Assembly (NCBI GenBank): GCA_002269645.1
Contig: NIVC01002758.1
Coordinates: 1 to 64,000, forward strand
From: Macrostomum lignano
Lineage: Eukaryota
Reading direction: 5' to 3'
DNA length: 64,000 bases
A program made the translations under genes and the position numbers. Positions 6,951 through 34,067 of the stretch are shown in pieces. The stretch's first letter is position 1; the number at the start of each line of letters is the position of its first letter. The notes under the pieces were generated by a model. That model saw only the letters and a program-made list of their open reading frames with translations, was not told the DNA's origin and searched no databases.

Positions 6951-8621
6951 GCGCTAGGAGGGCGCTAGCACACCTCTCCCTGTGCTTGGTTGTCACCCAC
7001 TGGTTAAATCCAAGTGGTGACAATTACAAAATGTCTATAAGAAGCTTGTTGCGACAACAGAACCAAAATTCGAGTATTTCCAGTTGAGAACAACTAGTGC
7101 TTTTGGTGTCAAAAAAATCCCTTTTCTATATATTTTCCTATGCTAAAATCTGGTGGGGATCCAAGCATTAATCACAAAGTTATTCACGAAACAAGTTGTA
7201 AAGTTACTTATGGGACACCCTGTATTTCCAATTGAGAACACCTAGTTATGTTTCCAACCTTCCAGACGACTCAGCCGTGGCCCGACGCGTCCCACGCCGC
7301 TTACAACGCGACGCTGCAGTCGCTCACTTCGCTGATCGGCTTCCCGAAGCAGGTGAGCCCCGACCAGGGCCTGACCATGCTCTACTACTCCTACCTGCAG
7401 GGTGAGCAGCTGATCCAGCCCAGCTCCGTGCAGCGCTTCGGCCAGTCGCTGGCCATGCGAGAGGCGGCCCGCAGCAACCTGGCCTGGATCCGGGTCGAGG
7501 CCGAGTACCCGATCGGGTCCGGCAGCGCCCAGGCCGACGGATATCCGGTGGAGAATCTGCTGGCCGAGATGGGCGGCATTCTGGGTCTGTACTGCGGCGT
7601 CTCGGTGCTGACCATCTGCGAGCTGATGGACCTGGTGGGCCGCCTGCTGCACCGTGCCGCACTGCGGTGGATGCGCCGCAGTCAGGTTGGCAGCTCCAAC
7701 GCCAAGCTGAAGGAGCCGTCAACGAATTTATAGTTATCAGATGCTATCGAAACTCGGTAACATCAGCTATGAAGACTAAAGATGCGTGTATATTTTTTCA
7801 TTGTAATCCCTATTTTATTCTCACTCCCACGTTCAGGTATAACATTTTTACCAACGTGAATCCAGCACTTTTAAGCTGACTATCTGATTTCACAAGCATA
7901 TGATCATGTATCTCGTCTATAACATCTTCACCGGTACTCGTCCCGGATCACCATCTAGAAGTCACCTTTGTATCAGGTTTTAATATTCGCATTCCACATT
8001 AAGTTATTTGAATGCTTATAATTTTGCGTAAGGCGATGTGCCTGTTTCCGAGGGGGCTTCATGAGTTTGTGGACTTCTGACTTTGCGTGGATGCGCGCTA
8101 TGCATGTTTGTGCTTTGTCACCTTTGCTGTATCCTTATAAAGAAACTTGATTTTTCTGCCTGAAGCCGCACTTGTCAGTCATTGATTGCGATAAAACTTC
8201 TTCTTTGCCTGTATGATTGCACTATTCAGCTAGGAAAAATACGTAAAATAAAGGAACAAACATGCTCTTTGAATTAAATTATCGTTTGGTGTATTAGCTA
8301 CTGAGCACCGATCTCAAGATATGCTGCAAATGCTTATCCAGCTATTCTAAAGCTACTATAGAGCTTTGCATAGATTTAGTGGGATGGAAGAAGTTCTTGG
8401 GGGGGCATTGGGAAAGCAAAGGCCAATGAAAAAGGAAACCAGCTCTTGTGTTTTCTTCCCTCAGCATCTCTGTGGGACTTATAAGCGGCTACACTATTCT
8501 GTAGTCAATAGCAACCAGCCGCCTACTCAACTTTGGCTCCTAAATAAAGGATAAATTTAATAGTTAGCCCCCGCCAACGAAAGGCCCCTCACCCAAAAAA
8601 TAAAGCAATAAAAGCATCGAA

Positions 8622-11600
8622 ATGAGAGAAGATAAAATGCTAGACACTCCTCAAGTTGAGAATAGCGGCAAACAACAAAGCGATTCCTCAGAAGCCGACA
8701 AGACAGACGAACGCGACGCGTCGGTCTCGGTGTCGCTGCTGAGCTTCGCAGACTCCACCACTGCTCACGGGTTCTCTCGGCTGGCGGGCTCCTCAGGTCG
8801 AACTGGCAGCGGCCTGTGGCTGCTGTTTCTGCTGGCGGCCTACGCCGGCCTCTGCTACCACACCGCCACGCTGGTCCTCAAGTTCCAGAGCCACCCGGTG
8901 TCCACCAGCCTGATTGCGGAGGTTCCATTCCAGTACCCGGATATCTACCTGTGCAGTGCCAATCCTGTAGGCTACAGCCGCATCACCAAGTCCATCCAGA
9001 AGACGGCCGACTACGCCTACCTGTACGAGACCAACGTGACGGCTTACAACTTGAAGCTGCAATTCGATGTGGAAAACAATTCAGCTGCTGAAGTAAGCCG
9101 GGGAATATATACTGGTTGGTTGAACTGGCAGTCAGTGATATTGTCCAGCAAGATTGACTTGGCTCGAGGTAAGGGTACAGAATTTGTGTCTTTTTATATG
9201 TAGTGCACATGACATATCATTTTGCAGTCAGTTTGAGCTTGGTTCGCCGCCAAGTGTAACCTTTTTTATACAACAATGTTCCCCGAAATACATGAAAAAC
9301 ATTATTTTTCACATTTATCGTCATTACTATATTGCAGACCTTCTGAACAGCTGTCGAATCTCTCTGCATGGCCAGGAGTTCGTAGGAAATTACACCACAG
9401 CGCTCACCTACAACCAGAGCTTGCAGCCGGTCCGAGTGCCCTGCCTCACCTGGTCAGAGGCCCGATCGCTCGTTAGCAATATCTCATCCGCCATTGGCAA
9501 TCTGATGCCCAACCTGAACCACTCTTCGTGCGTCTACAACTCCAGTCTAAACGTCTCACTAATCAAGGATGTGTTAGGTTAGTTCCGTTTCTCTGGAAAT
9601 GCTATCATGAAAGGTTTACCGAATGACTTGACGCAACTTGGGAAGATGACTTGAGTTCAAAGTAGGAAGAGAGCTTGTTTTTGTTTGAAGCCTTAATCTG
9701 GTGCAATCCAGAAACTGTTCTCCAAGAACACGGGGCGGCTTCCACAGAAGCAGTCAACATTGCTTTGTTGGTTTGCTCAAAGGCTTTAAACAACTGATTT
9801 CCTATCACTTCAACGTCCCGCTCTTCTGATGCTAATTATCGGCAGTGGCAACAGGCTAATTAATATTTGATTTTGTTTCATATACTCACCTTCTTGTCAT
9901 TTGGCAATCTCTTTTTCAACCCGTCTCGCTTCTCCACTGCATCGCTTTGTCACACAACTCAAAAACTTCTGCGCTCTCATTCACAGTAAGAAAACGTTTA
10001 CATTCTCAGATTCCAGCATCTCAGACAACAGCTACATCATTGGCAGCGTGCTGCAAGGCCCGCTCTGCTTCCACAGATCTGCCAGCAGCGGCAGCGGACT
10101 GGACATCAACTACTGCGGCGTTCCGTATTGCAGTGAGTGAAAAAGATGTCTGTTGCTGAGGTTCAGTTTGACTATTTTTAGGCGGCAGCTAGCAAAGAGA
10201 CAGCAAAAAGTATAGCATTTTGCAAGCTAGTAGAGACTACGAGCAAGCAATTTAATCCAAGATAGCAAAACACATGAATTTTGAGCCTCACTATGTGACA
10301 CTGTGTGTTAAAGTGTGTCAAATCGGCAGGCATTTTAATCCTTGGAGCACTATATTGCTCGGCCTTTTCATTAACTTCATGCATGCCTCCAACCAAACCA
10401 ACCAGGAAGCTCCATATGAAAAAGTTACGACGTAGAGCAAGGTTCAGCAAAAAAATTCACTTAACGAAACCTGCATTGGTATAGTCTCTACTAGCTTGCA
10501 AAATGCTATTGTTGGCCAAGCTTACTTTTAAGCACACTTAAGTACAGACTTGCATAAAAATGCCCTGATGCATGCACCACCCTCTGTGCTCTGTACCAAA
10601 GACAATTAAGTCAACTAGACCATACACAATCTAAAGTCAACTTGACCATAGAGAATAAAGTCAACTAGACCATAGAGAATAAAGTCAACTAGACCATAGA
10701 CAATTAAGTCAACTCGACATAGACAATATAAAGTCAACTAGACCATAGAGAATAAAGTCAACTTGACCATAGAGAATAAAGTCAACTTGACCATAGAGAA
10801 TAAAGTCAACTAGACCATAGACAATTAAGTCAACTCGACCATAGACAAGAAAATCAACTCGACATAGACAATATAAAGTCAACTAGACCATAGAGAATAA
10901 ATTCAACTAGACCATGGACAATAAAGTCAACTTGACCGTAGACAATAATCGTCGGGCACCTTCCGAGCTTCATGTATTAGAAAATGAATTTGCTTTTAAC
11001 TAAATCTAAAGGACTAATAGTGCGGTTCAGAATGAAGGTTAATAAGTAAAAATCTTTCATAAGCGAAATAAAAACAAATCGATTTAACTTTTTGTTAATC
11101 AAGCCTCGCTTATAGAAACCACAAAAAGCTTGAGGCGCATTTTTTTGCAGGCACTATTTTAATGCAGCTGGTTATAAATTATTTATGAACTGTAGGAATG
11201 CTTTAGGCTGACTAACAAAAGAAAAAGAAGACTTGTTCAAGTGTATGAGGGGCCTACTTTACCATGTGCAAGATTTCTCATGCCACTAGCATGAGTTGAG
11301 TCCTACTATGAACTTTCCACGCATATGCAGCAACTAACTAAGGAAAGAGTTCTGTGATAAAAACTAGTACTCGAACAAGTACCATGTCGTTTTTCTGCTT
11401 CTGAAGGCAAGAGATATAAAGATGGTTCAACGCAGAGAACTACTATTGTAGTTAAAATTTTTGATAGCATTGCATTATATGTATTCTATTGTTCAAGTGA
11501 ATTAAAGCAAAATGTCATCTTCTGTTTACATTTTTTTCATAATTTAAGCAAATGAGTTAGTTGCTAAAGTGGCATTGTGTCACTAAAATATGTAGGAAAT

Positions 11601-14600
11601 TAGCTTGACTTATTTGACTCAGCTGCAGGGGCTCCGGGCATCCGGCTACAGTGGGGAGACGTCGCCTGCCGACCCCTGGCAACCAACAGGCAGCTGTGGT
11701 GCTGTGGTGTCGCGCAGGGAGATCCGGTAGTGCCGGTGTCCGAAACGTGGTCCCTCTCCCGGTCCCCCTCGCTCGCCCGGTGGCTCTTAGGTAGCGGACG
11801 AGCTGGCAGAGATTCTCTGGCCTGAAAACGGGCTGAGGTAGGTGAGCCAAGGACTACTTATATGCTAGTGGTCCTTGAGGTGAGCCTGTCCTGAGTAAAG
11901 GCGGGCAAGTCACAGATGAAGCGCTCCGCATTCTCAACAAAAGAGATGCAAAATGGGCACTCATCACTACGGATTTTTCCCTGGAGGTAGCAATGCATGG
12001 CCTGAGAGAGCCATGGTCACCGCCCTGATGTCCCTGGGCGTTCCGCTATATTTAGGAGCAAGTTAAAGATTTTACAAATCAATTTAAAAATGGTCTGAAC
12101 CAACTGTACATTAATGTGAATCGGCTTTCAAAGAAGCCGTCAAGACTCAACACGCGCTAAAAACGTCCCTACGAGTAAATACCACGGTTTGCATTACCGC
12201 CAGTTAATCCTTGATTTTAAAATTTATTCGAACAATCTATGGTCTGCTGAACTACTGCTAGTAATACGAGCTGGTCTTTTTATCCTCTGTTGTTGTATAG
12301 AAAACTAAATCAGGCAAATAAATATTGAAAATGAGCATTTGATCATACATATCTGCTTCCTATTAAAACTATTGGCTACTAATGTGTTGAAAAATTAATA
12401 TGTGCTATATTTTAGTAGTTTATTTTGCAAATATATAGCCAGCCTTTTGCTAAAGAGTTTGTAGAAAACAGCGTTTAACTTAGCTTAAATCGCCCTTACA
12501 ATTCGCGCGCAGGGAAAAGCGCCAACGCCCTGTCAAACTGCTCATCACTGAGCCAGAGGGTCGCGATTAACACGGCCTACATGGGCCCAGTGCGCGAGTC
12601 GCGATCTGGAAAGCCGTGTCTGTCCTGGCAAGCCCTGGCTAATGGCAGTCTGAGCCGCCGGTTCCGCAACTTGAATCCGGCCTACGAGTTCCGAGTGTTC
12701 CTGCCCGACAGCGAATCTGTCGCTAGCGTTGGCAGCGGCTGCCGCAGCGCCGCAGTGATGTTCAAGGACAACAGCAGCAGCCTGGGCTGGCAGTCCCTTA
12801 CCAAGCTCGTCATAGACAGCGAAATCGGACTGGGTCCGTGGTGTCTGGTTGAGAAGCAGGGCTACAGAAATCTCACGATGGAGAGCTGCAGCGTGCCGGA
12901 ATGCTGTGAGTTTAGGACGGTAGTTTGTCCACAACGTGAGATCACAGGTAGTTTTTGGGACTTAATAAATTCGACGAGTTGAGAGAATAGCTGGGATGCT
13001 GATGGTTTTGGTATGATTCGTTGAAGATTTAAGTGAAGCAGGACAATTATTTCAGTAGGTTTTGTATATTTATGATGGTTCAATGTGGTTCATTGTAGTA
13101 TTTTTAGGAAAAAATTAACACACGAAGTACAAATTATCCCGGGTTATTTCTCAGAAAATAAATCATTTGTTTCTAATTGAGCATGCCCGTCTGTTGTTAC
13201 ACGTGTGATGCGTTGAAAAAGTAAAAAGTAGCTTCTAGGAAACCCCACGTGCTGCATGAATATCGATGCGACACTATTTTCTATTTTTCAGCAACCTCGC
13301 TGAAGTGCATCTCAGGCCTGCTGCACCAGAAGTACGGACCTCACGTGCTCTCCAAGCTGGTCGGCCCGAGCTTGGACGTCACCCTGCTCGACTGCAGCTT
13401 CGGTAGCATGAAGTGCACACCGGCTGACTTCACTGCGCTGCACCATCCCTACTACGGCGCCTGCTACAAGTTCAACAGCGCTCCGTTCCTTCGAGACTTG
13501 ACGCCGATGCAGCACGGCTTGCGTCCACTCAGTCTGAAGCTGTTCGCCGATGATCACGACTACCTGGGGAACCGGCGTCCGGACACCTTCACGGCCGTCC
13601 GAGCAGTCATGGGCGGCCCGTACAATCTCGGAGAGGCGAGTGACCCGGCCGGTTTCAACCTGATCCTGATGCCGCCGGGAGCTTATCCAGGCACCTCACA
13701 TGCCATTCCAATTTACACGGGGGCTCGGTCCACTGTTCGTATGCGCTACATCCTGGACATGGACAACACAACGAGGGGCCTTTGCAACAGTAACGAGTCA
13801 AGCATTGACTACAACATCTACAGCTGGAGCCCGACTGTACTTCGGCCGAAAACTGAGCAGAGCTTTAAGTCGCCTGATCCCTACTATTTGTAAGTGCTTT
13901 AGCGTGTTGAAAAAGTTTGGTTGAGTGTGCGCTTGCGTGTAGATCTTAGGTCTAAGTCGAGCAGTAACAAGTACCTTCTTCCATGGTACGTTCTCGATCA
14001 GGGGCGTCGCCACTGGGGGGGACAGGGGGGACATGTCCCCCCCCCCCAGTAAGAGCTTTGGGGGGACATTCCAATGCTTTGTCCCCCCTCCCTAATCCAC
14101 CTTGTGACCCGTTGTGGGAAGCAATGATTTTGTTTCAGGGCGCTTAAATGTAGCACATGCAGCGCTAAAGTAGTGCCTGCGGCGCTAAATGAGTGCCTGC
14201 AGCGCCAAAATGAGTGCCTGCGGCGCTAAAATAAGTGCCTGCGGCGCCAAAATAATCGCTGCCAGCACCACTCTGAAAATAATGTACACATGTGTCAAAA
14301 TTTAGTCATGTACATGTATAATTTGCAGAATTCTTTGCTTTGCCCCCGACCATAAAATCCATGGCGACATCCCTGTTCTCGATGAGTAGTCTGAATGAAT
14401 GAGTAGTCCTGATAAGTAATTCGACCTTGTTTCTCCGCGCAGCCAATTCAACAGAAGCTTTTTGGCTTTCACGAGCAACCAGGAGTCCTGCGCCAATCTA
14501 GCCGTCATTGACGAGTTTGTCCGCAAATGCAACTGCCTGCCCTACTCGCTGCCGATCCCTGTAAAGTACAAAAACGTAATCGACTGCTTTCATCTGAACA

Positions 14601-15737
14601 AATCCGAGCCCGACGCTGTTCTTCGCCTAATCGCGAGGGAGGACTGCGCCGTGAAACTGTTCTCGCAACTGGAGACACTCACCGAGACTTTCTGGGCCGG
14701 CTGCAGGGCCAACTGTAAGATGCCCAAGTACGCCACGCAGCTTGTGAGTTGGACAAGAAATCAGCCAAGCATTGCTTTTGAGTAGTTTGACAGAAACCAG
14801 TTGTACAGCGAGCTAGAAAACTCTTGTGACTTAATGATTTATGGATTGTGTCAGGTGTTAGACGTTCAGTTTAGTACAAAAGTGTCGAAAAAGAGCTTTT
14901 TGCGACAATAGCTAGTGCTGCCGGTGTCCAGCGGAGTCCAGGAGGTGGATGGTCGCTCGCCTCGGTAGCCCTTAGGGGTACAGGACGAGCTGAAAAAAAT
15001 TCTCGGGCACAAAAGCGTCGGAAAGGTCTGGGTTTGGGTCGACCGCATTTTCAACACCAGAAACACAGAATGGGCATTCCTCACTGCGGATTTCCCCTGG
15101 AGGTAGCGATACCTGGAAAATAGCCATGGACCTGAGTGGGTCATGGTTACCACTCTGATGTCCCTGCGGTTGAGTCCAAGCGGGCTCTGCTTTGAATAGC
15201 CAAACTTTGAATACTTCCAGTTGAGAACAACTAGTTATGTTTCCAACCCTTCAGACAACTCAGCCGTGGCCCGACGCGTCCCACGCCGCTTACAACGCGA
15301 CGCTACGGTCGCTCACTTCGCTGATCGGCTTCCCGAAGCAGGTGAGCCCCGACCAGGGCCTGACCATGCTCTACTACTCCTACCTGCAGGGTGAGCAGCT
15401 GATCCAGCCCAGCTCCGTGCAGCGCTTCGGCCAGTCGCTGGCCATGCGAGAGGCGGCCCGCAGCAACCTGGCCTGGATCCGGGTCGAGGCCGAGTACCCG
15501 ATCGGGTCCGGCAGCGCCCAGGCCGACGGATATCCGGTGGAGAATCTGCTGGCCGAGATGGGCGGCATTCTGGGTCTGTACTGCGGCGTCTCTGTGCTGA
15601 CCATCTGCGAGCTGATGGACCTGGTGGGCCGCCTGCTGCACCGGGCCGCACTGCGGTGGATGCGCCGCAGTCAGGTTGGCAGCTCCAACGCCAAGGACGA
15701 CAAGGTAGTGGAGGTTCAGCCAGCTAGAAAACTGTAA
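8622..15737 (+). CDS. DEG/ENaC family channel subunit, ~894 aa, with two kringle-like extracellular modules (paralog 2, intact)
   Basis: Exons 8622-9168, 9338-9577, 10010-10132, 12513-12905, 13292-13889, 14443-14743 and 15255-15737 total 2685 nt, in frame, all GT-AG. Pre-TM1 FADSTTAHG motif, TM1, FQYPDIYLCSANP, LLDCSF/YGACYKFN, Cys-rich thumb, QPWP, and TM2 with a GVS filter and Ala at the degenerin position. Confidence 0.93.
9338..10132 (+). other. Kringle-like module 1 (exons 2-3 of the channel)
   Basis: Six Cys in kringle order: NSCRISLHGQEFVG...VPCLTWS...HSSC...GPLCF...INYCGVPYC. Confidence 0.65.
10605..10945. repeat. ~24-bp minisatellite (TAAAGTCAACTAGACCATAGAGAA)
   Basis: Starts at 10632, 10656, 10680 and onward; about 14 degenerate copies. 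Confidence 0.9.
11590..12045 (-). mobile_element. Degenerate non-LTR retrotransposon 3' fragment (C-terminal CCHC-like region)
   Basis: Minus-strand translation RDIRAVTMALSGH / LQGKIRSDECPFCISFVENAERFICDLPAF resembles the C-terminal zinc knuckle of I/R1/Loa-group ORF2. Confidence 0.65.
12513..12905 (+). other. Kringle-like module 2 (exon 4 of the channel)
   Basis: SNC...TAYMGPVRESRSGKPCLSWQ...FLPD...SGCRS...GPWCLV...ESCSVPEC matches C..Y.G...T.SG..C..W...CR...PWC...C.(I/V)P.C. Confidence 0.75.
14905..15175 (-). mobile_element. Degenerate non-LTR retrotransposon 3' fragment
   Basis: RDIRVVTMTHSG / RYRYLQGKIRSEECPFCV on the minus strand; same family as 11590-12045. Confidence 0.6.
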
Positions 15738-16045: not shown

Positions 16046-16674
16046 CCCTGCGTATTCTGTTGTTGTTTTCATGTTTACATATTTTGCCCAACATTTCTTA
16101 ATCAATTTAACGATCTGAAATCTTACGCAATCAATTTTTAGTTTAACTTAGATTGGAAAAAATCTATATTTTTAATTTTCCTTTTAATCTCCTACTCGTA
16201 ATTGCTTGTTGGCATCTCTAGTTAAAGACACGGATTGTTTTGTTAGGATCCTTTCTTGCTTCTGACATTAATCGCGTACGTCTACGAGTTAAGACATTTG
16301 TTTCCATGCAAAATATACCTATTTTCATGAGTTCAAGCGTATGAAATCAAATTATTGTATTTTATGGTAAAGTTACGAGTACTTTAAAGTCGCGAGCTCT
16401 ATGGAATAATTTATAGGAAACAGCAGATTAATGGCGGAAAATTACAATCTTATTAATTATTAGTCGTCTGTACACAAGAAACTAATGTACTTGTTACACT
16501 ACTCTATACTAAGCTTGTTTCTCATGTCACAAAGATGTCAGCGGTTGGCATTGCTTTGTCCTCAACCGAGCAGCACCGCCTTCTGGTAGCTCCTGAAATG
16601 AAAAAGCATTGAAATATGATTATTTAACTAGGCATGAGTTGTTATTCCGCATCAGATAGATTTCTCACTCAACT

Positions 16675-18494
16675 TGTTCTCCTAAACCTGTCCTACTCAA
16701 CCTGTCCTACTCAACCTGTCCTACTCAACCTGTCCTACTCAACCTGTCCTACTCAACCTGTCCTACTCAACCTGTCCTACTCAACCTGTCCTACTCAACC
16801 TGTCCTACTCAACCTGTCCTACTCAACCTGTCCTACTCAACCTGTCCTACTCAACCTGTCCTACTCAACCTGTCCTACTCAACCTGTCCTACTCAACCTG
16901 TCCTACTCAACCTGTCCTACTCAACCTGTCCTACTCAACCTGTCCTACTCAACCTGTCCTACTCAACCTGTCCTACTCAACCTGTCCTACTCAACCTGTC
17001 CTACTCAACCTGTCCTACTCAACCTGTCCTACTCAACCTGTCCTACTCAACCTGTCCTACTCAACCTGTCCTACTCAACCTGTTCTCCTCAACCTGTCCT
17101 ACTCAACCTGTCCTACTCAACCTGTCCTACTAGACCTGTCCTACTAGATCTGTCCTACTCAACCTGTCCTACTCAACCTGTTCTCCTCAACCTGTCCTAC
17201 TCAACCTGTCCTACTAGACCTGTCCTACTCAACCTGTCCTACTCAACCTGTCCTACTCAACCTGTCCTACTCAACCTGTCCTACTCATATGTCCTACTCA
17301 TATGTCCTACTCAACCTGTCCCACTCAACCTGTCCTCCCTGTCCTCCTAAACCTGTCCCACTCAACCTGTCCTACTCAACCTGTCCTACTCAACCTGTCC
17401 TACTCAACCTGTCCTCCTAAACCTGTCCCACTCAACCTGTCCTACTCAACCTGTCCTACTCAACCTGTCCTACTCAACCTGTTCTCCTCAACCTGTCCTA
17501 CTCAACCTGTCCTACTAGACCTGTCCTACTAGATCTGTCCTACTTAACCTGTCCTACTCAACCTGTTCTCCTCAACCTGTCCTACTCAACCTGTCCTACT
17601 AGACCTGTCCTACTCAACCTGTCCTACTCAACCTGTCCTACTCAACCTGTCCTACTCAACCTGTCCTACTCAACCTGTCCTACTCAACCTGTCCTACTCA
17701 ACCTGTCCTACTCAACCTGTCCTACTCAACCTGTCCTACTCAACCTGTCCTACTCAACCTGTTCTCCTCAACCTGTCCTACTCAACCTGTCCTACTCAAC
17801 CTGTTCTCCTCAACCTGTCCTACTCAACCTGTCCTACTAGACCTGTCCTACTAGATCTGTCCTACTTAACCTGTCCTACTCAACCTGTTCTCCTCAACCT
17901 GTCCTACTCAACCTGTCCTACTAGACCTGTCCTACTCAACCTGTCCTACTCAACCTGTCCTACTCAACCTGTCCTACTCAACCTGTCCTACTCATATGTC
18001 CTACTCATATGTCCTACTCAACCTGTCCCACTCAACCTGTCCTCCCTGTCCTCCTAAACCTGTCCCACTCAACCTGTCCTACTCAACCTGTCCTACTCAA
18101 CCTGTCCTACTCAACCTGTCCTCCTAAACCTGTCCCACTCAACCTGTCCTACTCAACCTGTCCTACTCAACCTGTTCTCCTCAACCTGTCCCACTCAACC
18201 TGTCCTACTCAACCTGTCCTACTCAACCTGTCCCACTCAACCTGTCCTCCTAAACCTGTCCCACTCAACCTGTCCTACTCAACCTGTCCTACTCAACCTG
18301 TTCTCCTCAACCTGTCCTACTCAACCTGTCCTACTAGACCTGTCCTACTAGATCTGTCCTACTTAACCTGTCCTACTCAACCTGTTCTCCTCAACCTGTC
18401 CTACTCAACCTGTCCTACTAGACCTGTCCTACTAGACCTGTCCTACTAGACCTGTCCTACTTAACCTGTCCTACTCAACCTGTTCTCCTCAACC
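16675..18494. repeat. 14-bp satellite (CTCAACCTGTCCTA)n
   Basis: ~1.8 kb array; variant blocks recur about 708 bp apart (CTCATATGTC near 17284 and 17992). Confidence 0.97.
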
Positions 18495-19136
18495 TCCCTT
18501 CTTTCCCAGGCCTCACCAGCCGCCGATAAACGAGTACAAAGGTCCTGCCAGCGTGGCTCTGTGCTGTTGCTGCTGTGTCGGATAAGCCACAGCTGCAGCG
18601 CTGCCGCCCGATCTGGCCAATCCAGAGCCTGTCGGTGCGGTGCAACGGCCGCCGCGGCTTCGTTGACCAGCGCTGCTCGGATGCCGCCTCATGGCTGACA
18701 GGGAGGCTGGAAACAAGGGAGTGGAGTTTTTCGCATTTAAAGTGAGACAGATCGTGCTTGATTAAATTGTTATTTGTTTTCACTTAAAATATTAAAATTA
18801 ATTTTAGTGATTTTAGCTCACTTTCCTGCTTACAGTAGGACAAAAGGCGCGTATTAGTCTTAAGTATTTTGTTAGGGACCAAAAAACAAAGGCAAAACTA
18901 TTAACAAAAAATGGTTTCAGTTAAACATTAGCTTAAGGGTGTAGCACCGTTCTTTAGTTAAATATGTCATTAGCTATGTATTAGCCACAGTTTTTGATTG
19001 CTAAGTTATTAATAAAACGTTATAGCAGAAGATGTACCACCGTTAGCTTGAAATGTTCATTACAATACCTGGTCCACTGAAATGATTTAAAAGTGGTACT
19101 TGGTGTACTTTCTGTAAAAACTAAAAGATACATGTA

Positions 19137-19346: not shown

Positions 19347-20303
19347 ATTTTTGACAATTTCGGACATTTATGACAGCCAAAGCAATTATGAAGTATGATT
19401 TATGACAGTTATGAAACTGCTATTTTTAGCCATAATAGACTGAGCCGTATGCTCTCCACACAGCCTTCTAGAGAACTTTCTACTCGTACATTTTAGAACA
19501 AGTTTTGTTTGCACACGAATCCCACCCCACTCCCCCAATTAACCAGTAAAATTTACAAATACTAAATACTCAATAACTACAAAGGCCTCATACTGCAGCA
19601 AGCGGATGCTGGAAGCCGAATGCCTACCTCTACCCAACACACCGAAGCTACATTAATACCCCAACTCAACTCGACAGGTACTCGATCCCTATGGATGAGC
19701 AGATTTGAACGCTAATATCAGCAGCTATGGCTACCCCAACACAGACATTCTGACATTCAGGCATCGAGCGATCACGGCAGTACGTAGTGATCTCAAAAAA
19801 TGCCTGTTGCAATTCAACCTTACAAAAGAAGCCCAGAAGTTCTACGTTACTTTTCGAGACTTTTACGTTTTATCCATGTACATGTACGCGATTTTCACCT
19901 GGTCCGGCACACTGAATTCTTCAATTTTCAAGTCAAATAATTCGTACGAAATTAAACTCACAGTTTTCTACTCTAAGTAGACTGAGAATTTTTTGTTTTA
20001 TTTGTAAGTTTGAAAAAAATGAAAAAGGCAGCAGTTAAAGTGAACTCAAATGCTCATCCTCATTTCGTCAGCATATTTGTACAGTTATGTTTTCTAAAAC
20101 GGATTTTCCTGATATATTATTCTTTGAGCCAGAACACGTGGACCTGGTTCAATTCCGTGAGCGGCCACTCTAATTAAAGGCTTATGGACGAAAATTTGCC
20201 GAGTGGTTGTCGTGCGATTCACCCATCAGGGCCACTCCAAAATGCACAGAGTGTACATGCAACAATGGACGATTAGAAAGTCTTATTGACTGCGGAGAGC
20301 TGC

Positions 20304-20704
20304 ACGATAGCATCACGTGATTAAGGTTCAAGGCTGCTGCTAGGGCAATCATCTGATTGGTCGTAGAGACCTGCGCGATAGCATCACGTGATTAAGGTTC
20401 AAGGCTGCTGCTAGGGCAATCATCTGATTGGTCGTAGAGACCTGCACGATTAGCATCACGTGATTAAGGTTCCAGGCTGCTGCTAGGGCAATCATCTGAT
20501 TGGTCGTAGAGACCTGCACGATTAGCATCACGTGATTTAAGTTCAAGGCCGCCGCTAGGGCAATCATCTGATTGGTCGTAGAGACCTGCACGATTAGCAT
20601 CACGTGATTTAAGTTCAAGGCCGCCGCTAGGGCAATCATCTGATTGGTCGTAGAGACCTGCACGATTAGCATCACGTTATTAAGGTTCAAGGCTGCTGCT
20701 AGGG
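20304..20704. repeat. 71-72-bp tandem repeat, ~5.5 copies
   Basis: GCATCACGT at 20310, 20381, 20453, 20525, 20597 and 20669. Confidence 0.95.
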
Positions 20705-22953
20705 GAAAACATCTGACTTGGTGTTAATAACACGTAGTTGTCTCCGACGAAAAGTTATTTGTCTTCAGTTTAAAAACAATTTTTCTGTCACTGTAACTCC
20801 TATAATTCTGTAACTCATTCACTATTCACTACAAACTTTTAATAGCTCACTCAGACTGGTATATGTAACTCGATTTTAAGTGCGCGTATACCTATACTAT
20901 TCGAATATGTACAAGTACAGACGCAACTAACTAACTAACTCCGGCGCCTCAGCCATTGAACAGGCTCTTACGCCACTAAGAATGAATTGGGTTACTAATG
21001 TACACTAGGTTTCTAAGCTAGGCTAAAAGAGACTGTGACCATCAAGCCGAGCAGGCGACACCAGTCGGGCTGAGGGAGGGCCCTACCCCCAGCTGTCGGG
21101 GCGTCACACCTACTCCAAGCACAAAACTAAACCTCCCCGAGGCTAGCAGGGGTTGAGTGAACCAATCAGGGAAGCCCGTGCCTTTTGGGATAGTGTACCT
21201 TCATAATAATGGTCCTAAGACCTCCCCACGGCCGTGGCAACCCGAAGGAGCCTCCCCACCTACTAAACCCCGGGTACTCTTTGCCAAGACAGTCACTTAT
21301 CTTTTAAGCGGCAGGAGGGTTATTCGCGGGACTATTTCACCCTTTGCTTCGCCAACCCGCCATTTAAATTAGGGGCCGTGCCAACGGCCTCGTCCTGGTC
21401 AGACTCAGTCCTGGTTTTGGCACAATCCAGCTTAAACCTAGTCGTTCACCAGCAGACACTCCGGGGGAGACCGTCAGAGCATCAACTGGAACGAGTATAG
21501 GCCTGCCTTCCTATACAGCTACCCACAGCCCTTCCTGATCGACTATTACACTCTAATCCAGCCTACTAACTCATTACAAGCTTTCAGCCAGGCAGAGACA
21601 AGTGTCACAGGGGTACTGCGGTTAGGCGTTAATGCGACAGAGACTCAAATTTTAAAATGTGTTCTGTGAATTAAACACCACGAGGTAGTTTTCATCAACA
21701 TGCATTTGTTTTCAAAAAGCTCTACTGTCAGTAGAGCGTGTAACAAATGAAGCATTTCTCGCTTTAAGGCTTCGAGTTCTCTGGCGCAAACTAAGTATTG
21801 TCAAAAAACGAATGCGAAAACGAAAACAAAGACCACTTATAAAGAAATTTTTAGAGAAAACGAACGTAGCAAACAAAAGAAGAAACTGTAGATTTTTTTA
21901 TTGCATTCAAGCAATTTTTTATTAACGATTTAACAAATAGAAACAGAAAAAGCTAATAAAAATATGTATAAAGACTAACGACTATTTTTAATCTTAAAAT
22001 GGATTTTATCCTACTAACAATGCGAAAAGTCGCACAATAAAAGAGATAAACAAAATAAACAAAAATGCACAACAATTTGACTTAACACAACAGAAAAGCA
22101 AAAACAAAAAACAGAAACAATATTATTTTAAACAAAATAGTATAATTGAAGCTTGTTTTGCTGCTTCATACCTGTTGTAAAATATTGGCAAAAAACTACA
22201 AAAAGATGGAAACCACAAATACAAATACTATAATATTAGTAAGGCTGATTTATAACTAAAAATGCATGTATACTACTGACAGTGCGAAAAAGTCGCGCAA
22301 TACAAAAAGATGGACAGAAAATGCATAAAACACGTTTAAAAACACGCATTTGAAATGAACCAAAGAAAACAAAAAACGCAATGCAAGATTTGAGATAGCA
22401 ACGAAATAACTATTTAGCTACACCTTAATTACCAACTTGGCTACGCCATTAATCATAAAAACTTACAAGTTACATTTACTTTCGATACATATCGGGACAA
22501 ATAGAACAAAGACTCAAATGCTTCACTTCTGAACCTAATGCTATACAAAAACCGAATAGGCTGCAGATTGATATTCTATTTTAATTTAGTTACAAATACG
22601 TTAACCTGAAAAAACCGTAGAGATCAACGGATTTCCATAAGAATTATACGAGAGTACATCGATATAATAGTAATCCAAACTCCGTATGTACTATTGTGCC
22701 TTGCTTAGTCGCCGTGTTGCTTGACTTCTAACGGGAAGGTCGGGGGTTCAAATATTAACTGCTCGACCAAACTGTTTTTTTCTTTTTAATTTGTTTACCA
22801 AAAGAGAGTAAATTTCTCCTCTTTTGTAGTTTGTAATGTTTTTCAATCATAATTTTTGTCTTTAATAAATTTTAATGATACAATAAATGTCCGATATGTA
22901 TCGAAATGATTTAAAACTCTGGATTAGGGAATGTTCATTGATTGGTCAAGTTT

Positions 22954-24540
22954 TTATTGCCGCTTGTTGCTATGCACAGTGCGGATGTGTGTGTTGAGAC
23001 TGCTGTTTCGATTGAAAGCCTTGCCACAGTAGGTGCAACTGAATGGCTTCTCGCCTGTGTGGATGCGCATGTGATCCTTGAGATGGCTGCTCACACTGAA
23101 AGCCTTGCCACAGTAGCTGCAACTGAATGGCCTCTCGCCTGTGTGGATGCGGATGTGTTTCTTGAGATCGCTGCTCACACTGAAAGCCTTGCCACAGTAG
23201 CTGCAACTGAATGGCTTCTCGCCTGTGTGGATGCGGATGTGTTTCTTGAGATCGCTGCTCACACTGAAAGCCTTGCCACAGTAGCTGCAACTGAATGGCT
23301 TCTCGCCTGTGTGGATGCGCATGTGATCCTTGAGATGGCTGCTCACACTGAAAGCCTTGCCACAGTAGCTGCAACTGAATGGCCTTTCGCCTGTATGAGC
23401 TCGCATATGTACAGTCAGATTTACTTCCCCATGAAACCTAGCCTTACACACAGAACAGACGTATCGCCTCTCCAACAGATGCACCAATCTCACGTGAGTA
23501 ATTTTATTCGATTTGCTCTTGAAAACTTTCTCACAAAATCCGCAAATTAAATCGCCACCCGAGTTTAAAATGTCGGCCTCTTCATACAGCGGCCTGTCGC
23601 TAGCGCTGTCGCCGTCTTCGGCTACAATGTTGTACAGTTTGGCCATCTCGTCGCCATAGTAGACAAGAAGCTCGTGATCCGGGCTGATGTCCCGGATAGC
23701 AATGTAATAGACGTTATTATCCCACTGGAAGGCTATCATGTTCTGCTCGCAGAGGTTCCTACTACAATTAACGTAGCGCATCCAATTGGAGAAGCGCATG
23801 TCGGCGGCGTCAACCCATTCGCAAGACTTGTCGCGTCGAATCTCCCAGGCGTAGGAAGACGCCTCAGCGGTGGCTTTGTCGGTGATTCGCTGGCCAAGAT
23901 AGGGTCCGAAGATGGAGCCCCTAGCGATAGGAGCTTCGGCCCACACGCCATTGCCAGCGTGTCGGCCAACAGCGGAGCGGCAGATCCTCATGCCGTCAGG
24001 CAGCGTAAGATCAGAGAAATTCTCAGCAGTACCAAATCCATCCGGCATTTTATTGCTCACCCAGCGTTGATGCAGCTGGCAGCAATCGCCAAACACCTCT
24101 TTGCCGCAGTCATAGCAGTACAAGCTGCGCTCATCTGTCTCCTTGTAGACGCAGGCAGTTTTACCGCGCCTCGGCGGCAGTTGGCGCGGCTCTGTCGGTA
24201 GAAAAGCCGCGATGACAGCAGAGCCAGAACTTCTGAACTTGCTGGAACAGGCAGAAGCAGTTTTGATCTTCTTCTTTGAGTTGGCCAGTGGCTGATAGTC
24301 AGGGTCGCTGTCGCTATCATGTCGGTTGCGCTTCTTTTGCACAGTACAGGCTCGTTTTGGCTGCTTTTGCCTAGCAACTGTTGCCTTGCCAACAGCAGCT
24401 GTTGACGCTGCTCGCTGCTGCTCAACTGGTTGTTGCAGATCTGGGACACCTTCAGCACCAAATAGTTCTTTAATAAGGCGCTCATTTTCTGCCTTCCTGT
24501 TCAACCGCAGCAGCTCATAACTGCTAATGGTTGCTGACAT
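22954..24540 (-). CDS. PRDM9/7-like PR/SET-domain C2H2 zinc-finger protein, 528 aa, single coding exon
   Basis: Zn knuckle LYCYDC...DCCQLH; PR/SET LPDGMRI...GVWAE...FGPYLG...NWMRYVNC...EQNMIAFQ...VYY...ELLVYYGDE; seven C2H2 fingers with TGE(K/R)P linkers. Confidence 0.88.
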   Translation of the reverse strand: MSATISSYELLRLNRKAENERLIKELFGAEGVPDLQQPVEQQRAASTAAVGKATVARQKQPKRACTVQKKRNRHDSDSDPDYQPLANSKKKIKTASACSSKFRSSGSAVIAAFLPTEPRQLPPRRGKTACVYKETDERSLYCYDCGKEVFGDCCQLHQRWVSNKMPDGFGTAENFSDLTLPDGMRICRSAVGRHAGNGVWAEAPIARGSIFGPYLGQRITDKATAEASSYAWEIRRDKSCEWVDAADMRFSNWMRYVNCSRNLCEQNMIAFQWDNNVYYIAIRDISPDHELLVYYGDEMAKLYNIVAEDGDSASDRPLYEEADILNSGGDLICGFCEKVFKSKSNKITHVRLVHLLERRYVCSVCKARFHGEVNLTVHMRAHTGERPFSCSYCGKAFSVSSHLKDHMRIHTGEKPFSCSYCGKAFSVSSDLKKHIRIHTGEKPFSCSYCGKAFSVSSDLKKHIRIHTGERPFSCSYCGKAFSVSSHLKDHMRIHTGEKPFSCTYCGKAFNRNSSLNTHIRTVHSNKRQ

Positions 24541-26029
24541 CTAGAAGTTGTAAACAAATCAAATATCACATTAAAGCTAGTCACATTTTCTGAATAAAAA
24601 TTGTAGCAATACTTCTTAGGCCTATCTTAGGAAGTTAATATGTAAATCCTTCTAGAAAAAATGGACACTTTAAACAAAATTTATCCAATAAAAAAGGATT
24701 TAGCCAAAGAAAGACAAAGAAGTTATATATAGGGCGAAGTCAAAGCTATAATAAAGTGGATATTATAATAACAAAATGCAACTCAATTCTATGAACTAAA
24801 TAGTTTACTACATAGGCCAAAACCAATAGTCTAAAACTTAAATTACTATTATTTGAATAAAATGCATAGCACTTTAGTACCTAAACCCATGTTTAGGGTA
24901 TTTGCACAACTTAATTTTTTCATGTCAGGTTTTCTAGGGATTTTATTTTTTAGGTTCTTTTTAGATTAATCTAACAAATGAAAAATATAGACTACCTAGC
25001 ATATATACATTTTCATAAATTAAACTAAAATTTGCACAAATAACATATTAAGATATCTTTAGTAGTTAGCAAGTTATCAATGGCAAAAACTGATGCTAGG
25101 GGAAAACAAGAGAGCCACAGACAAATCAGACTAAGGCAATAAACTCAGAGTAATAAAGTTGATAAAACTCAACCTGATACAAAAAGATCTGTCTTGATAC
25201 ATATAGTCCTATAGAAGTTTTTATAATGCTATCTAATACCTAGTTTAATTGTTTTGCAATTTTTCAATTAGGTGGCCCACTATTACCTGCTGATAATAGA
25301 TCTATATTTATGGTCATAGTTATCTAGATTTGTTTCTAACTCTTTAGACTTCTTGTTTCTTGTTAACTATTATTATTACTTGCACAAATTTAAATTAAGC
25401 ATAAACAAATAAAACTCTATTTATCAATTTATGCTTCCTAACTTATAATAACAATAGACATGCATTTTGTTCCTTCATGACCTTATTTTGTATTTTTATT
25501 TTTAGGTTGTAAACACTGCATATTTTGAAATAAATTTTAAGTTTTAAAATTGAAAATTAATCATAATTAATTTGTTGAAATGATTCAATAAATGAACAAA
25601 AATTGTAATTATATTGTAGTTTGTGCTATTGTTGCAACATTATCCCATTTGTCCCTGTGAGGGCTATCAGAAAATTTTTGCTTATTAGTCAATAAAATTA
25701 AAACTAAGTCATATTAAAAGATAAAACTTATCAAAAAACTCTATTAGCATCTCATTACTCAAAATATTTGCCACTAGCCTCAAGGCATTTTTCCCACTGC
25801 AGCACAAGTCCATCAATGCTGGCACTAATGCTGCTCTTTGTTGTGGCTGCTATTCCTTTGTGCTAAGCCTCATTGGCTTCTTCTTTGCTGCTAAAATGCT
25901 GGCCTTGCATTGTCTCCTTGATCCTAGGGAAGAGGAAAAAGCTAGCTCGTACATGGGCTAAGATACAATGAAAAAGGCCAGTGCAGAAGAATCTCCCAGC
26001 CCCATAAGGAGATAGTTTCAATCAACAAT

Positions 26030-33606: not shown

Positions 33607-34067
33607 GACAGCAGGAAAATTCCATGCCTCAACTCTCAAAACAAGTTGCTAATTGTTGGCTGAACTCAGCCGAAATCGGACACTCTTGACTTTTCTGCCT
33701 ACATGCAGCTACACTAAAAGTGCAATTCGAGGCACTCACCGCTGGTTGGTGCCACCTGCTCTAGAGTAGCAGCCCTCGATAGAAGTAGCTGAAAATTATT
33801 TGAATAATCGTAATTATAAAGCCCAACAATAATTTCCAGATTGCAGAAACCTTTTTTGAACTCCCTCACGGCATGCTTCATCCCTCACGCCATGCTTCAT
33901 CCCTCACGCCATGCTTCATCCCTCACGGCATGCTTCATCCCTCACGCCATGCTTTCTTTCCTCTCCCTGATCCTCCCCAATCTTTCCTCTTTGAGCATAC
34001 TTCTAGCTTCTAGGAAATATCTTCACGTCATCAAGCCAGCTCCATCAAGAATCCCCCCCCCAATCTG

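What the first reader, a model, noticed from the sequence alone, without database searches (positions are those of the whole stretch)
22972..23400. Zinc-finger array behaves like a minisatellite, with only non-synonymous differences
Four 84-bp fingers are arranged A-B-B-A. A (SVSSHLKDHM) and B (SVSSDLKKHI) differ at 4 nt in the helix, all amino-acid changing, at helix positions 3, 6 and 8, plus a K/R change in the linker. I saw no synonymous differences within the cores. Concerted evolution with variation focused on DNA-contact positions is the known PRDM9 signature, although the sample is small.
Basis: partly seen in the sequence, partly recalled or inferred. Interest (0 to 1): 0.75.

Follow-up and report, generated by a model that had tools for sequence, protein, structure and literature searches.

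The report
Fast-evolving PRDM9-like zinc fingers, flatworm

Summary
Window 23044-23379 (minus strand) holds four 84-bp C2H2 fingers in the order A-B-B'-A. The two A units are identical. A and B differ at 4 nt in 3 codons (helix +3, +6, +8), all amino-acid changing. One B carries a K/R linker change. On its own this is not significant (P about 0.38).

The array is the C-terminus of an intact 528-aa ORF (22954-24540, minus). The ORF has a zinc knuckle, a PR/SET domain closest to PRDM9 (1e-31) with all three catalytic tyrosines, and seven fingers. The organism is Macrostomum lignano.

A syntenic second copy of the locus also encodes 528 aa. Between the copies the SET region is under strong purifying selection (omega 0.04). 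Fingers 3-6 differ at 42 nt, all in amino-acid-changing codons, none synonymous, at helix -1, +1, +2, +3, +6 and +8. The finger backbone is nucleotide-identical in all eight fingers, apart from one K/R linker change.

So the PRDM9 signature is real. Caveats:
- No KRAB or SSXRD is recognisable.
- Finger number does not vary.
- Expression is low and not gonad-restricted.
- A recombination role is untested.

This is a new member of a known kind. Prdm7/9 had been reported missing in the two flatworm species sampled earlier.

The parts
22954..24540 (-). Complete single-exon ORF of 528 aa: a PRDM9-family protein of Macrostomum lignano
   Evidence: ORF list. Pfam hits: PRDM2_PR 1.3e-34, SET 6e-12, zf-C2H2 and zf-H2C2_2. 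99% identical over the N-terminal 330 aa to UniRef A0A1I8ILI9 'PRDM9' of M. lignano. 92% identical to PAA57651.1.
24457..24525 (-). Residues 6-28, SSYELLRLNRKAENERLIKELFG: a possible remnant of the second half of the PRDM9-type (ancestral) KRAB domain. The first half is absent.
   Evidence: In a MAFFT alignment it lines up with urchin SDYEKLRLKNIKENYEMMIEVGL and mussel SDYEKLRYRNMKKNYEMMVKMGL. The support is weak. Pfam finds no KRAB. A custom KRAB-like HMM scores 1.3 bits, and 44 of 5000 shuffles score as high.
24121..24189 (-). Residues 118-140, PRQLPPRRGKTACVYKETDERSL: a degenerate SSXRD-like stretch just before the zinc knuckle
   Evidence: It aligns in position with the Pfam-recognised SSXRD of frog PRDM9-like P0016, residues 197-219. 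Pfam SSXRD is not detected in the window protein, even at E up to 1.
24067..24120 (-). Pre-SET zinc knuckle, residues 141-158 (YCYDCGKEVFGDCCQLHQ)
   Evidence: Aligned with the PRDM9 knuckle in PDB entries 4c1q and 6nm4 and in invertebrate PRDM9-like proteins.
23629..23967 (-). PR/SET methyltransferase domain, residues 192-304, with Y214, Y279 and Y295 matching human PRDM9 Y276, Y341 and Y357
   Evidence: Pfam. PDB search: PRDM9 1.1e-31. Tyrosine positions and their spacing of 65 and 16 residues. Omega is 0.036 against the second copy.
23467..23550 (-). ZF1 (C-x2-C-x12-H-x4-H), a divergent finger that is not part of the tandem repeat
23380..23463 (-). ZF2, a divergent finger. Its GERP linker begins the 84-bp periodicity.
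   Evidence: HG becomes QL just before and at helix -1 in the second copy.
23296..23379 (-). ZF3, unit type A (helix SVSSHLKDHM)
   Evidence: Identical to ZF6 at 84 of 84 nt.
23212..23295 (-). ZF4, unit type B (helix SVSSDLKKHI)
   Evidence: Differs from A at 4 nt, all non-synonymous.
23128..23211 (-). ZF5, unit type B' (the same helix as B, with linker GERP)
   Evidence: Differs from ZF4 at 1 nt.
23044..23127 (-). ZF6, unit type A
22960..23043 (-). ZF7, the terminal finger (helix NRNSSLNTHI). Its first 30 nt match the repeat with one difference (ACC for AGC, T/S), then it diverges.
   Evidence: In the second copy ZF7 has helix SVNSHLKY, which is nearly the window's type A helix. This indicates helix shuffling between positions.
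23013..23394 (.). The 84-bp tandem repeat as called by TRF (4.5 copies, 95% matches)
   Evidence: The second copy has 4.6 copies at 97%.
22953..22958 (-). AATAAA overlapping the TAA stop codon: a putative polyadenylation signal
   Evidence: Read from the sequence. This is an inference.
24541..24546 (-). 'ttctag' preceded by a pyrimidine-rich tract, directly upstream of the ATG: a putative cis- or trans-splice acceptor. It is conserved in the second copy.
   Evidence: This is an inference. The codon before the ATG is an in-frame stop.

Best explanation
The array is the DNA-binding module of a PRDM9-family histone-lysine methyltransferase gene of the flatworm Macrostomum lignano.

Shown:
- The protein has a zinc knuckle, a PR/SET domain closest to PRDM9 with the three catalytic tyrosines intact, and seven C2H2 fingers. 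Fingers 3-6 are a nearly perfect 84-bp tandem array.
- Between two syntenic copies of the locus, most likely two of the three subgenomes of this neopolyploid, the catalytic half is conserved.
- The recognition helices of fingers 3-7 have been almost completely replaced, while the finger backbone stays nucleotide-identical apart from one K/R linker change.
- Equivalent fingers have changed in parallel. ZF4 equals ZF5 in both copies. A helix type sits at a different position in each copy.
- This is concerted evolution by gene conversion within the array, together with diversifying selection on binding specificity.

Inferred:
- The protein binds a DNA motif through the array and methylates nearby nucleosomes.
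- Its targets are a moving target. The leading candidate is the PRDM9 mechanism, in which the protein marks meiotic double-strand-break sites, biased gene conversion erodes those sites, and new finger alleles are then favoured.

I put about 0.9 on the identity and the evolutionary mode, and about 0.35-0.4 on the recombination role.
For: Gene identity:
- Pfam PRDM2_PR 1.3e-34 and SET.
- The best PDB relatives are three PRDM9 SET entries at 1e-31 to 2e-30, against PRDM11 at 6e-21.
- The full HMMER scan gives top hits named PRDM9-like or PRDM7_9 in Priapulus, fishes, Mytilus, a barnacle, a sea urchin and a frog.
- UniRef names the M. lignano protein PRDM9.
- Catalytic tyrosines Y214, Y279 and Y295 align with human Y276, Y341 and Y357. 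These are the criteria of Baker 2017, PMC5519329.

Second copy:
- L001 is collinear with the window over about 21 kb and also encodes 528 aa.

Selection:
- Residues 1-330: dS 0.087, dN 0.0065, omega 0.074. SET region: omega 0.036. ZF3-7: omega 1.44.
- ZF3-6: 42 nt differences, all in amino-acid-changing codons, at unit codons 12-15, 18 and 20 plus one at codon 27. The backbone is identical in all 8 fingers, apart from that one codon-27 (K/R linker) change.
- Fisher's test P = 7e-12. 41 of 72 helix-codon nt differ. No synonymous differences against 5.0 expected.
- Array divergence is 12.5-15.6%, against 1.6% in SET and 2.5-4.5% in the 3' flank.

Concerted evolution:
- W3 equals W6 and L4 equals L5. 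Fingers within one array differ at 0-5 nt, and fingers between arrays at 7-13 nt. The L7 helix resembles the W3/W6 helix.
- Within the L001 array, 100% of amino-acid diversity in ZF3-6 lies at -1, +2, +3 and +6.

A third version, P0001, is a mosaic of the other two.
Against: - No KRAB or SSXRD domain is found by Pfam. Only a 10-residue match to a custom PRDM9-type KRAB profile is seen (1.3 bits; 44 of 5000 shuffles as good). No upstream exon for the missing half appears within 11 kb, in either copy.
- In vertebrates, PRDM9 orthologues without KRAB and SSXRD do not direct recombination and usually lack fast-evolving fingers (Baker 2017, as summarised).
- The L001 copy (Mlig000687.g1) has low read counts in positional RNA-seq: 12, 14, 23 and 18. 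It is classed 'Non-Specific' and has reads in the gonad-free head fragment.
- The array is short, with 4-5 homogenised fingers, and finger number does not differ between the copies.
- Only two full arrays and one partial one could be compared. It is not known whether they are alleles or subgenome paralogues.
- No chromatin, break-site or motif-erosion data exist.
Confidence: 0.55

Rival explanations
1. This is a PRDM9-derived SET and zinc-finger protein in an arms race with selfish DNA, either transposons or the abundant satellites of this genome. It would work like vertebrate KRAB-zinc-finger repressors. The array tracks fast-changing repeats, the SET domain marks chromatin there, and meiosis is not involved.
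For: - Expression is low and not gonad-restricted, with reads in the head fragment.
- No recognisable KRAB or SSXRD, the parts that in mouse connect PRDM9 to the break machinery.
- The genome is about 75% repeats (PMC10733133). The window itself has 50 TRF rows scoring at least 100, and a reverse-transcriptase ORF.
- Positive selection at contact residues is also typical of transposon-targeting zinc-finger genes. This last point rests on my own knowledge, not on a tool result.
Against: - Near-perfect nucleotide homogenisation of the finger backbone, with diversity confined to contact residues, is far more extreme in PRDM9 than in any other zinc-finger gene of the mouse (Oliver 2009). It is the statistic used to single out recombination-active PRDM9 (Baker 2017).
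- The three tyrosines needed for the PRDM9 dual-mark activity are kept.
- No repressor domain is present.
Confidence: 0.25
2. This is an ordinary developmental PRDM transcription factor. Its duplicated copies are drifting or sub-functionalising after the recent whole-genome duplication. On this view the helix differences are by-products of gene conversion and relaxed constraint, not of selection for new specificity.
For: - M. lignano carries three paralogous subgenomes, so redundancy exists.
- Only two or three sequences were compared.
- Omega over ZF3-7 as a whole is 1.44, not far above 1.
Against: - 41 of 72 nt differ at the helix codons, while neutral proxies differ by 2.5-9% (3' flank; dS of the same gene). 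This is far more than drift allows in the same time.
- ZF3-6 show 0 synonymous against 42 non-synonymous differences.
- Both ORFs are intact with the same length, and SET omega is 0.036.
- Zinc-ligand and structural residues are untouched.
Confidence: 0.12
3. This is an assembly artefact. On this view the A-B-B-A order and the perfect repeats come from collapse or mis-joining of reads in a repetitive, polyploid genome.
For: - The published M. lignano assemblies are described as error-prone, with collapsed or expanded haplovariants (PMC10733133).
- The UniRef model P0001 has a broken array.
Against: - An independent record, GCA_002269645.1 NIVC01002460.1, has the same ORF length, the same seven fingers and the same symmetric A'-B'-B'-A'' layout with different helices.
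- The differences respect the reading frame and cluster in particular codons. Sequencing errors would not do this.
Confidence: 0.03

Closest known systems
Vertebrate PRDM9 (human and mouse; hotspot-positioning H3K4/H3K36 trimethyltransferase)
   Same: - Zinc knuckle plus a PR/SET domain, which is the best sequence match.
- Three catalytic tyrosines.
- A C-terminal C2H2 array encoded by 84-bp tandem units with identical finger pairs.
- Diversity concentrated at -1, +2, +3 and +6.
- The array is replaced between close copies while SET is conserved. The features used for comparison are those described in PMC2779102 and PMC5519329.
   Different: - No recognisable KRAB or SSXRD; at most short remnants.
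- Only 7 fingers, of which 4-5 are homogenised.
- No spacer between the post-SET finger and the array.
- A single-exon ORF.
- Finger number is the same in both copies.
- Expression is not gonad-restricted in the one dataset found.
- The function is untested.
Invertebrate PRDM9 orthologues with concerted finger evolution: Nematostella, Lottia and Capitella (Oliver 2009) and cnidarian multi-copy PRDM9 (2026 preprint 10.64898/2026.09.07.749791)
   Same: - A non-vertebrate PRDM9-family gene with highly similar tandem fingers.
- Several full-length copies coexist in one genome, as in 10 of 28 cnidarians.
- Catalytic tyrosines are conserved.
   Different: - The cnidarian full-length copies carry all four domains. 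This one lacks a recognisable KRAB and SSXRD.
- For the spiralians Lottia and Capitella, Oliver et al. found concerted evolution, but evidence for positive selection was 'less compelling'. Here the comparison of two copies gives it directly.
- This is the first flatworm case I could find. Prdm7/9 was reported absent from Schmidtea and Schistosoma (PMC4760075).
Partial PRDM9 orthologues lacking KRAB and SSXRD (for example teleost PRDM9-beta, swordtail fish)
   Same: Domain content as detected by profile searches: SET plus fingers only.
   Different: Those orthologues generally carry substitutions at the catalytic tyrosines and have slowly evolving arrays (Baker 2017). This gene keeps all three tyrosines and has a fast-evolving array.
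KRAB zinc-finger repressors of transposons
   Same: A tandem C2H2 array with positive selection at contact residues, evolving in step with changing genomic targets.
   Different: This gene has a SET domain and no KRAB. Backbone homogenisation is much stronger than is usual for those genes (for the mouse comparison).

Membership tests
PRDM9 (Prdm7/9 subfamily) | PR/SET domain closer to PRDM9 than to other PRDM subfamilies | tested here: met
   PDB search: PRDM9 113.8 bits (1.1e-31), PRDM11 78.5, PRDM2 69.3, PRDM14 65.1. The top database relatives are named PRDM9-like or PRDM7_9. No phylogenetic tree was built.
PRDM9 (Prdm7/9 subfamily) | Pre-SET zinc knuckle | tested here: met
   Residues 141-158 align with the knuckle in 4c1q and 6nm4 and in invertebrate homologues.
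PRDM9 (Prdm7/9 subfamily) | Catalytic tyrosines equivalent to human Y276, Y341 and Y357 | tested here: met
   Y214 (FGPY), Y279 (VYY) and Y295 (VYY), with spacing of 65 and 16 residues as in human. The criterion is from PMC5519329.
PRDM9 (Prdm7/9 subfamily) | N-terminal KRAB-related domain | tested here: inconclusive
   Pfam gives no hit at E up to 1, but Pfam also misses the KRAB of frog PRDM9-like P0016. A custom profile from 17 homologues scores 1.3 bits, and 44 of 5000 shuffles do as well. Only 'TISSYELLRL' aligns. The first half (xxYFTxxEW) is absent from the ORF and from 11 kb upstream.
PRDM9 (Prdm7/9 subfamily) | SSXRD motif | tested here: not met
   Pfam SSXRD is not detected, although it is detected in frog P0016. 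There is only a positional resemblance, RRGKTACVYKETDE, in the alignment.
PRDM9 (Prdm7/9 subfamily) | C-terminal tandem C2H2 array with very high nucleotide identity between fingers (concerted evolution) | tested here: met
   The 84-bp repeat has 95-97% matches. ZF3-6 differ pairwise at 0-5 of 84 nt, with identical pairs in both copies.
PRDM9 (Prdm7/9 subfamily) | Rapid change focused on DNA-contact residues (-1, +2, +3, +6) between alleles, copies or species | tested here: met
   Window against L001: 42 of 42 differences in ZF3-6 are non-synonymous, at -1, +1, +2, +3, +6 and +8. P = 7e-12 against the N-terminal half. The share of within-array diversity at contact sites is 100% in L001 and 53% in the window. 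No genome-wide ranking against other C2H2 genes was possible.
PRDM9 (Prdm7/9 subfamily) | Expression in meiotic germ cells | tested here: inconclusive
   Positional RNA-seq re-analysis (PMC7336406, Table S8): Mlig000687.g1 has 12, 14, 23 and 18 reads and is classed Non-Specific. The counts are low and reads multi-map among paralogues. Other supplements do not mention it.
PRDM9 (Prdm7/9 subfamily) | Determines the positions of meiotic double-strand breaks, with erosion of its own motif | not testable with these tools
   This needs the whole genome, chromatin and break maps, or genetics.
PRDM9 (Prdm7/9 subfamily) | Co-occurrence with ZCWPW1, ZCWPW2 and other partners | not tested
   No way to fetch those queries here. 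It is listed as a next step.
Coding minisatellite | Unit-number instability between copies or individuals | tested here: not met
   There are 4.5 against 4.6 TRF copies, and seven fingers in both loci. Flanking non-coding arrays differ between the window and L001: 5.9 against 10.9 copies (72 bp), 131.6 against 63.6 (14 bp) and 4.9 against 17.9 (19 bp).
Coding minisatellite | Homogenisation and shuffling of units by conversion or unequal exchange | tested here: met
   There are identical units within arrays, parallel replacement in ZF4 and ZF5, and a helix type at a different position in the two copies.

The most novel reading that the evidence does not exclude
A flatworm, which is a spiralian protostome, uses a PRDM9-type system to place meiotic recombination, even though its protein has lost a recognisable KRAB and SSXRD. 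Each of the three subgenomes of this neopolyploid carries a different finger array, so one inbred worm would express two or three binding specificities. That could contribute to the reported genetic isolation and retained heterozygosity of the large-chromosome copies. It would move PRDM9-directed recombination outside deuterostomes and cnidarians, into a laboratory animal that already has transgenesis and RNAi.
Probability: 0.25. Interest if true: 0.8.

Novelty: new member of a known kind. Interest (0 to 1): 0.58.

Why it matters
Whether PRDM9 positions recombination outside vertebrates is an open question. A 2026 preprint calls it 'poorly explored outside vertebrates'.

The only comparative survey I found reported Prdm7/9 as missing from the two flatworms it sampled. 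I found no paper that links PRDM9 and Macrostomum.

This locus shows that an early-branching flatworm keeps a PRDM9-family gene with intact catalytic residues. Its fingers evolve in the PRDM9 manner. The evidence for selection is stronger than what was available for other spiralians.

It is also a possible exception to the vertebrate rule that fast-evolving fingers go with an intact KRAB and SSXRD.

M. lignano is a tractable laboratory model, so the hypothesis can be tested directly.

If the gene turns out not to act in meiosis, it would be an example of a SET and zinc-finger protein in some other genomic arms race.

Tried and rejected
- Exact-sequence look-ups of the window protein and of P0001 in the contig index found nothing. 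Only P0003 gave a locus.
- A protein search with the finger region returned 2081 generic zinc-finger proteins and no further M. lignano copy.
- I searched for an upstream exon encoding the first half of the KRAB domain, using motif scans and tblastn with frog, urchin and mussel N-termini over 11 kb of the window and 10 kb of L001. The hits had stop codons and were not shared by the two copies.
- Pfam on residues 1-135 found nothing. A custom KRAB profile gave only a marginal match.
- I searched the supplements of three M. lignano transcriptome papers for PRDM9 or Mlig000687 and found nothing. A fourth paper gave the positional counts.
- One literature query with min_terms=2 returned flatworm papers without PRDM9 and was wasted.
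- ARAGORN and Rfam found no RNA gene in the window, so the tRNA-like stretch 3' of the gene stays unexplained.
- I rejected the pseudogene reading because both ORFs are intact and SET omega is 0.036.
- I rejected a chance repeat because the TRF score is 680 and the second copy has the same array.
- I did not attempt a recognition-code motif prediction or a depletion test, because a 64-kb window cannot support one.
Full report
**1. What is in the sequence**

Tandem Repeats Finder reports an 84-bp repeat at 23013-23394, with 4.5 copies and 95% matches. It lies on the minus strand inside one open reading frame, 22954-24540, of 528 aa. The protein has seven C2H2 fingers.

I cut the fingers into 28-codon units:

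| Finger | Window coordinates | Helix | Type |
|---|---|---|---|
| ZF3 | 23296-23379 | SVSSHLKDHM | A |
| ZF4 | 23212-23295 | SVSSDLKKHI | B |
| ZF5 | 23128-23211 | SVSSDLKKHI | B' |
| ZF6 | 23044-23127 | SVSSHLKDHM | A |

- ZF3 and ZF6 are identical at all 84 nt.
- ZF4 and ZF5 differ by one base, a K/R change in the linker.
- A and B differ at 4 nt in three codons: H/D at helix +3, D/K at +6 and M/I at +8.
- There is no synonymous difference.

About 82% of random changes in this unit would alter the protein, so five out of five has P of about 0.38.

**2. What gene it is**

- Pfam finds a PR domain (PRDM2_PR, 1.3e-34) and SET at residues 192-304, followed by the fingers.
- Residues 1-330 find PRDM9 SET-domain structures as best solved relatives (4c1q, 6nm4 and 4ijd, 1e-31 to 2e-30). 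PRDM11 follows at 6e-21 and other PRDMs are weaker. The alignment includes the pre-SET zinc knuckle.
- The three tyrosines used as the marker of PRDM9 catalytic competence are human Y276, Y341 and Y357 (Baker et al. 2017, PMC5519329). They align with Y214, Y279 and Y295, with the same spacing of 65 and 16 residues.
- The organism is Macrostomum lignano. A UniRef protein named 'Histone-lysine N-methyltransferase PRDM9' is 99% identical over the N-terminal part (P0001). PAA57651.1 (P0003, BOX15_Mlig000687g1) is in the same 90% cluster.
- A full HMMER scan of 1.8 billion representatives gives PRDM9-like or PRDM7_9 proteins as the next relatives. They come from Priapulus, catfishes, Mytilus, a barnacle, a sea urchin and a frog, at 33-46% identity. 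None of the 20 relatives whose species I looked up is a flatworm.

**3. The N-terminus**

Pfam detects neither KRAB nor SSXRD in residues 1-135, even at E up to 1. Pfam also misses the KRAB of a frog PRDM9-like protein that clearly has one, so that negative result is weak.

An alignment with invertebrate and frog homologues places:
- SSYELLRLNRKAENERLIKELFG against the second half of the PRDM9-type KRAB (urchin SDYEKLRLKNIKENYEMMIEVGL);
- DSDSDPDYQP against the conserved DSDEEWxP motif;
- RRGKTACVYKETDE at the position of SSXRD.

A profile built from 17 homologues gives only 1.3 bits, and 44 of 5000 shuffles score as well. The first half of the domain (xxYFTxxEW) is missing from the ORF.

I found no exon for the missing half within 11 kb upstream, in either copy of the locus. 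The ATG is directly preceded by an in-frame stop codon inside a good splice-acceptor-like 'ttctag', which is conserved in the second copy. Spliced-leader trans-splicing is common in this species, according to the title and abstract of PMC8629364. An mRNA that starts at this ATG is therefore plausible, but it is not shown.

I conclude that KRAB and SSXRD are at best degenerate remnants.

**4. The decisive comparison**

P0003 is encoded on GCA_002269645.1 NIVC01002460.1, fetched as L001. L001 is collinear with the window over about 21 kb. Blocks are 83-99.6% identical, with many indels.

M. lignano is a neopolyploid with three subgenomes. About 85% of its genome is present in three paralogous copies. 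These differ by about 2.2% overall and 1.1% in coding sequence (PMC10733133). The window and L001 are most simply two of these copies. P0001 is a mosaic of the two and would be the third. They could instead be alleles from different lines, and I cannot tell which.

Both genes encode 528 aa without gaps. Nei-Gojobori estimates:

| Region | dS | dN | omega |
|---|---|---|---|
| Residues 1-330 | 0.087 | 0.0065 | 0.074 |
| Knuckle plus SET | 0.070 | 0.0025 | 0.036 |
| ZF3-7 | 0.108 | 0.156 | 1.44 |

Finger by finger, ZF3-6 differ at 7, 12, 13 and 10 nt, 42 in all.
- Every difference is in an amino-acid-changing codon.
- All lie at unit codons 12, 13, 14, 15, 18 and 20 (helix -1, +1, +2, +3, +6 and +8), plus one at linker codon 27.
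- The rest of the unit is nucleotide-identical in all eight fingers.
- At the six helix codons, 41 of 72 nt differ.

Statistics:
- Zero synonymous differences where 5.0 are expected gives P = 0.0066.
- 42 of 42 non-synonymous gives P of about 2e-4.
- 42:0 against 5:18 in the N-terminal 330 codons gives Fisher P = 7e-12.

Raw divergence:

| Region | Divergence |
|---|---|
| SET | 1.6% |
| Residues 1-135 | 3.2% |
| 3' flank | 2.5-4.5% |
| ZF3-6 | 12.5% |
| ZF7 | 15.6% |

**5. Concerted evolution**

L001 has the same symmetric layout. ZF4 and ZF5 are identical (SRDDSLKTHM). ZF3 (SQDGHLKNHM) and ZF6 (SQDGSLKTHM) are similar to each other. Within that array, all amino-acid diversity in ZF3-6 lies at -1, +2, +3 and +6.

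Fingers differ at 0-5 nt within an array and at 7-13 nt between arrays. ZF4 and ZF5 must therefore have been replaced in parallel in at least one lineage. The helix of L001 ZF7 (SVNSHLKY) is nearly the type A helix of the window. This shows that helix segments move between positions.

These are the hallmarks that Oliver et al. 2009 described for PRDM9: identical finger pairs, and non-allelic gene conversion combined with positive selection at contact residues.

The array does not behave like a minisatellite in unit number. Both copies keep seven fingers. The true minisatellites beside the gene do differ between the window and L001:
- 72-bp array: 5.9 against 10.9 copies;
- 14-bp array: 131.6 against 63.6 copies;
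- 19-bp array: 4.9 against 17.9 copies.

**6. How it most likely works**

Shown:
- a PRDM9-family protein with an apparently competent SET domain;
- a DNA-binding array whose specificity-determining residues turn over very fast, while everything else is conserved.

Inferred:
- The array binds a specific motif, and the SET domain methylates nearby nucleosomes.
- The selective pressure is a changing set of targets.

The best-known cause of this exact pattern is the PRDM9 'Red Queen'. Break-induced biased gene conversion erodes the binding motifs, and new finger alleles are then favoured (summarised). I take this as the leading mechanism, at about 0.35-0.4.

Evidence against it:
- The domains that couple PRDM9 to the break machinery are not recognisable.
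- In vertebrates, orthologues without them neither direct recombination nor evolve fast.
- The one expression dataset I found gives low, position-unspecific counts of 12, 14, 23 and 18 reads. These include the gonad-free head fragment.

The main rival is an arms race with repeats or transposons (0.25). Post-duplication drift (0.12) does not fit the 57% nucleotide divergence at helix codons beside flank and synonymous divergence of 2.5-9%. An assembly artefact (0.03) does not fit the independent second record.

**7. Comparison with what is known, and novelty**

Rapid, concerted evolution of PRDM9 fingers is well known in mammals. Concerted evolution has been reported for Nematostella, Lottia and Capitella, and multi-copy full-length PRDM9 for cnidarians. 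The kind of feature is therefore known, and databases already name the protein PRDM9.

What appears to be new:
- a flatworm member, since Vervoort et al. did not find Prdm7/9 in Schmidtea or Schistosoma, and no paper in the library links PRDM9 with Macrostomum;
- direct evidence for diversifying selection in a spiralian;
- the combination of fast fingers and intact tyrosines with no recognisable KRAB or SSXRD;
- different arrays in paralogous copies, probably within one genome.

**Verdict**

This is a new member of a known kind, with interest of about 0.58.

Noticed in passing
window 20295-20722; L001 13961-14749: A 72-bp non-coding minisatellite about 2.2 kb downstream of the gene has 5.9 copies in the window and 10.9 in the second copy of the locus.
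   Followed up: partly
window 16667-18495; L001 16838-17727: A 14-bp tandem array (ACTCAACCTGTCCT) has 131.6 copies in the window and 63.6 in L001. It creates a spurious 238-aa ORF at 16634-17350.
   Followed up: partly
window 33862-33954; L001 1012-1350: A 19-bp array has 4.9 copies in the window and 17.9 in L001. Overall the window has 50 TRF rows scoring at least 100, so tandem repeats make up a very large share of this region.
   Followed up: no
window 7248-7733, 8622-9203, 13249-13893, 15237-15737 (+): Four ORF pieces match the amiloride-sensitive sodium channel family (Pfam ASC). Two of them hit the same C-terminal part of the profile (positions 400-454), which suggests two tandem DEG/ENaC genes or a duplicated exon.
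   Followed up: no
window 2164-4485 (-): A 773-aa ORF in a block of 64% G+C carries a reverse-transcriptase domain (RVT_1, 6e-15). It is a retroelement fragment. A 406-aa ORF overlaps it on the other strand and has no Pfam match.
   Followed up: no
window 22690-22760: About 200 bp beyond the stop codon there is a stretch resembling a tRNA T-arm (ggtcgggggttcaaat). ARAGORN and Rfam call nothing there. It may be a tRNA-derived SINE remnant.
   Followed up: partly
L001 1-17867 (+): The public annotation has a 372-aa gene model on the same strand that spans the whole PRDM9-like gene. The gene may therefore sit inside an intron of another gene, or the model may be wrong.
   Followed up: no
P0001 (UniRef A0A1I8ILI9), residues about 375-423: This third M. 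lignano version starts at YELL and has a broken array (…CGKAFS|EKPYSCSYCGKAFSRNSSLNTHI…). It looks like a gene model that skipped the repeat. Its substitutions are a mosaic of the window and L001 states.
   Followed up: partly
window 23431-23436 (ZF2 codons 11-12): The non-repeat finger ZF2 also differs between the copies just before and at helix -1 (HG against QL). ZF1 differs at two helix residues (N/S and T/A). Change at recognition positions is therefore not limited to the homogenised fingers.
   Followed up: partly
window 24707 upstream; L001 9835: Homology between the two copies stops about 167 bp upstream of the ATG, at an indel, and resumes further on (window 24800-25334 against L001 8267-8793, 91%). 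The promoter-proximal regions therefore differ in structure.
   Followed up: no
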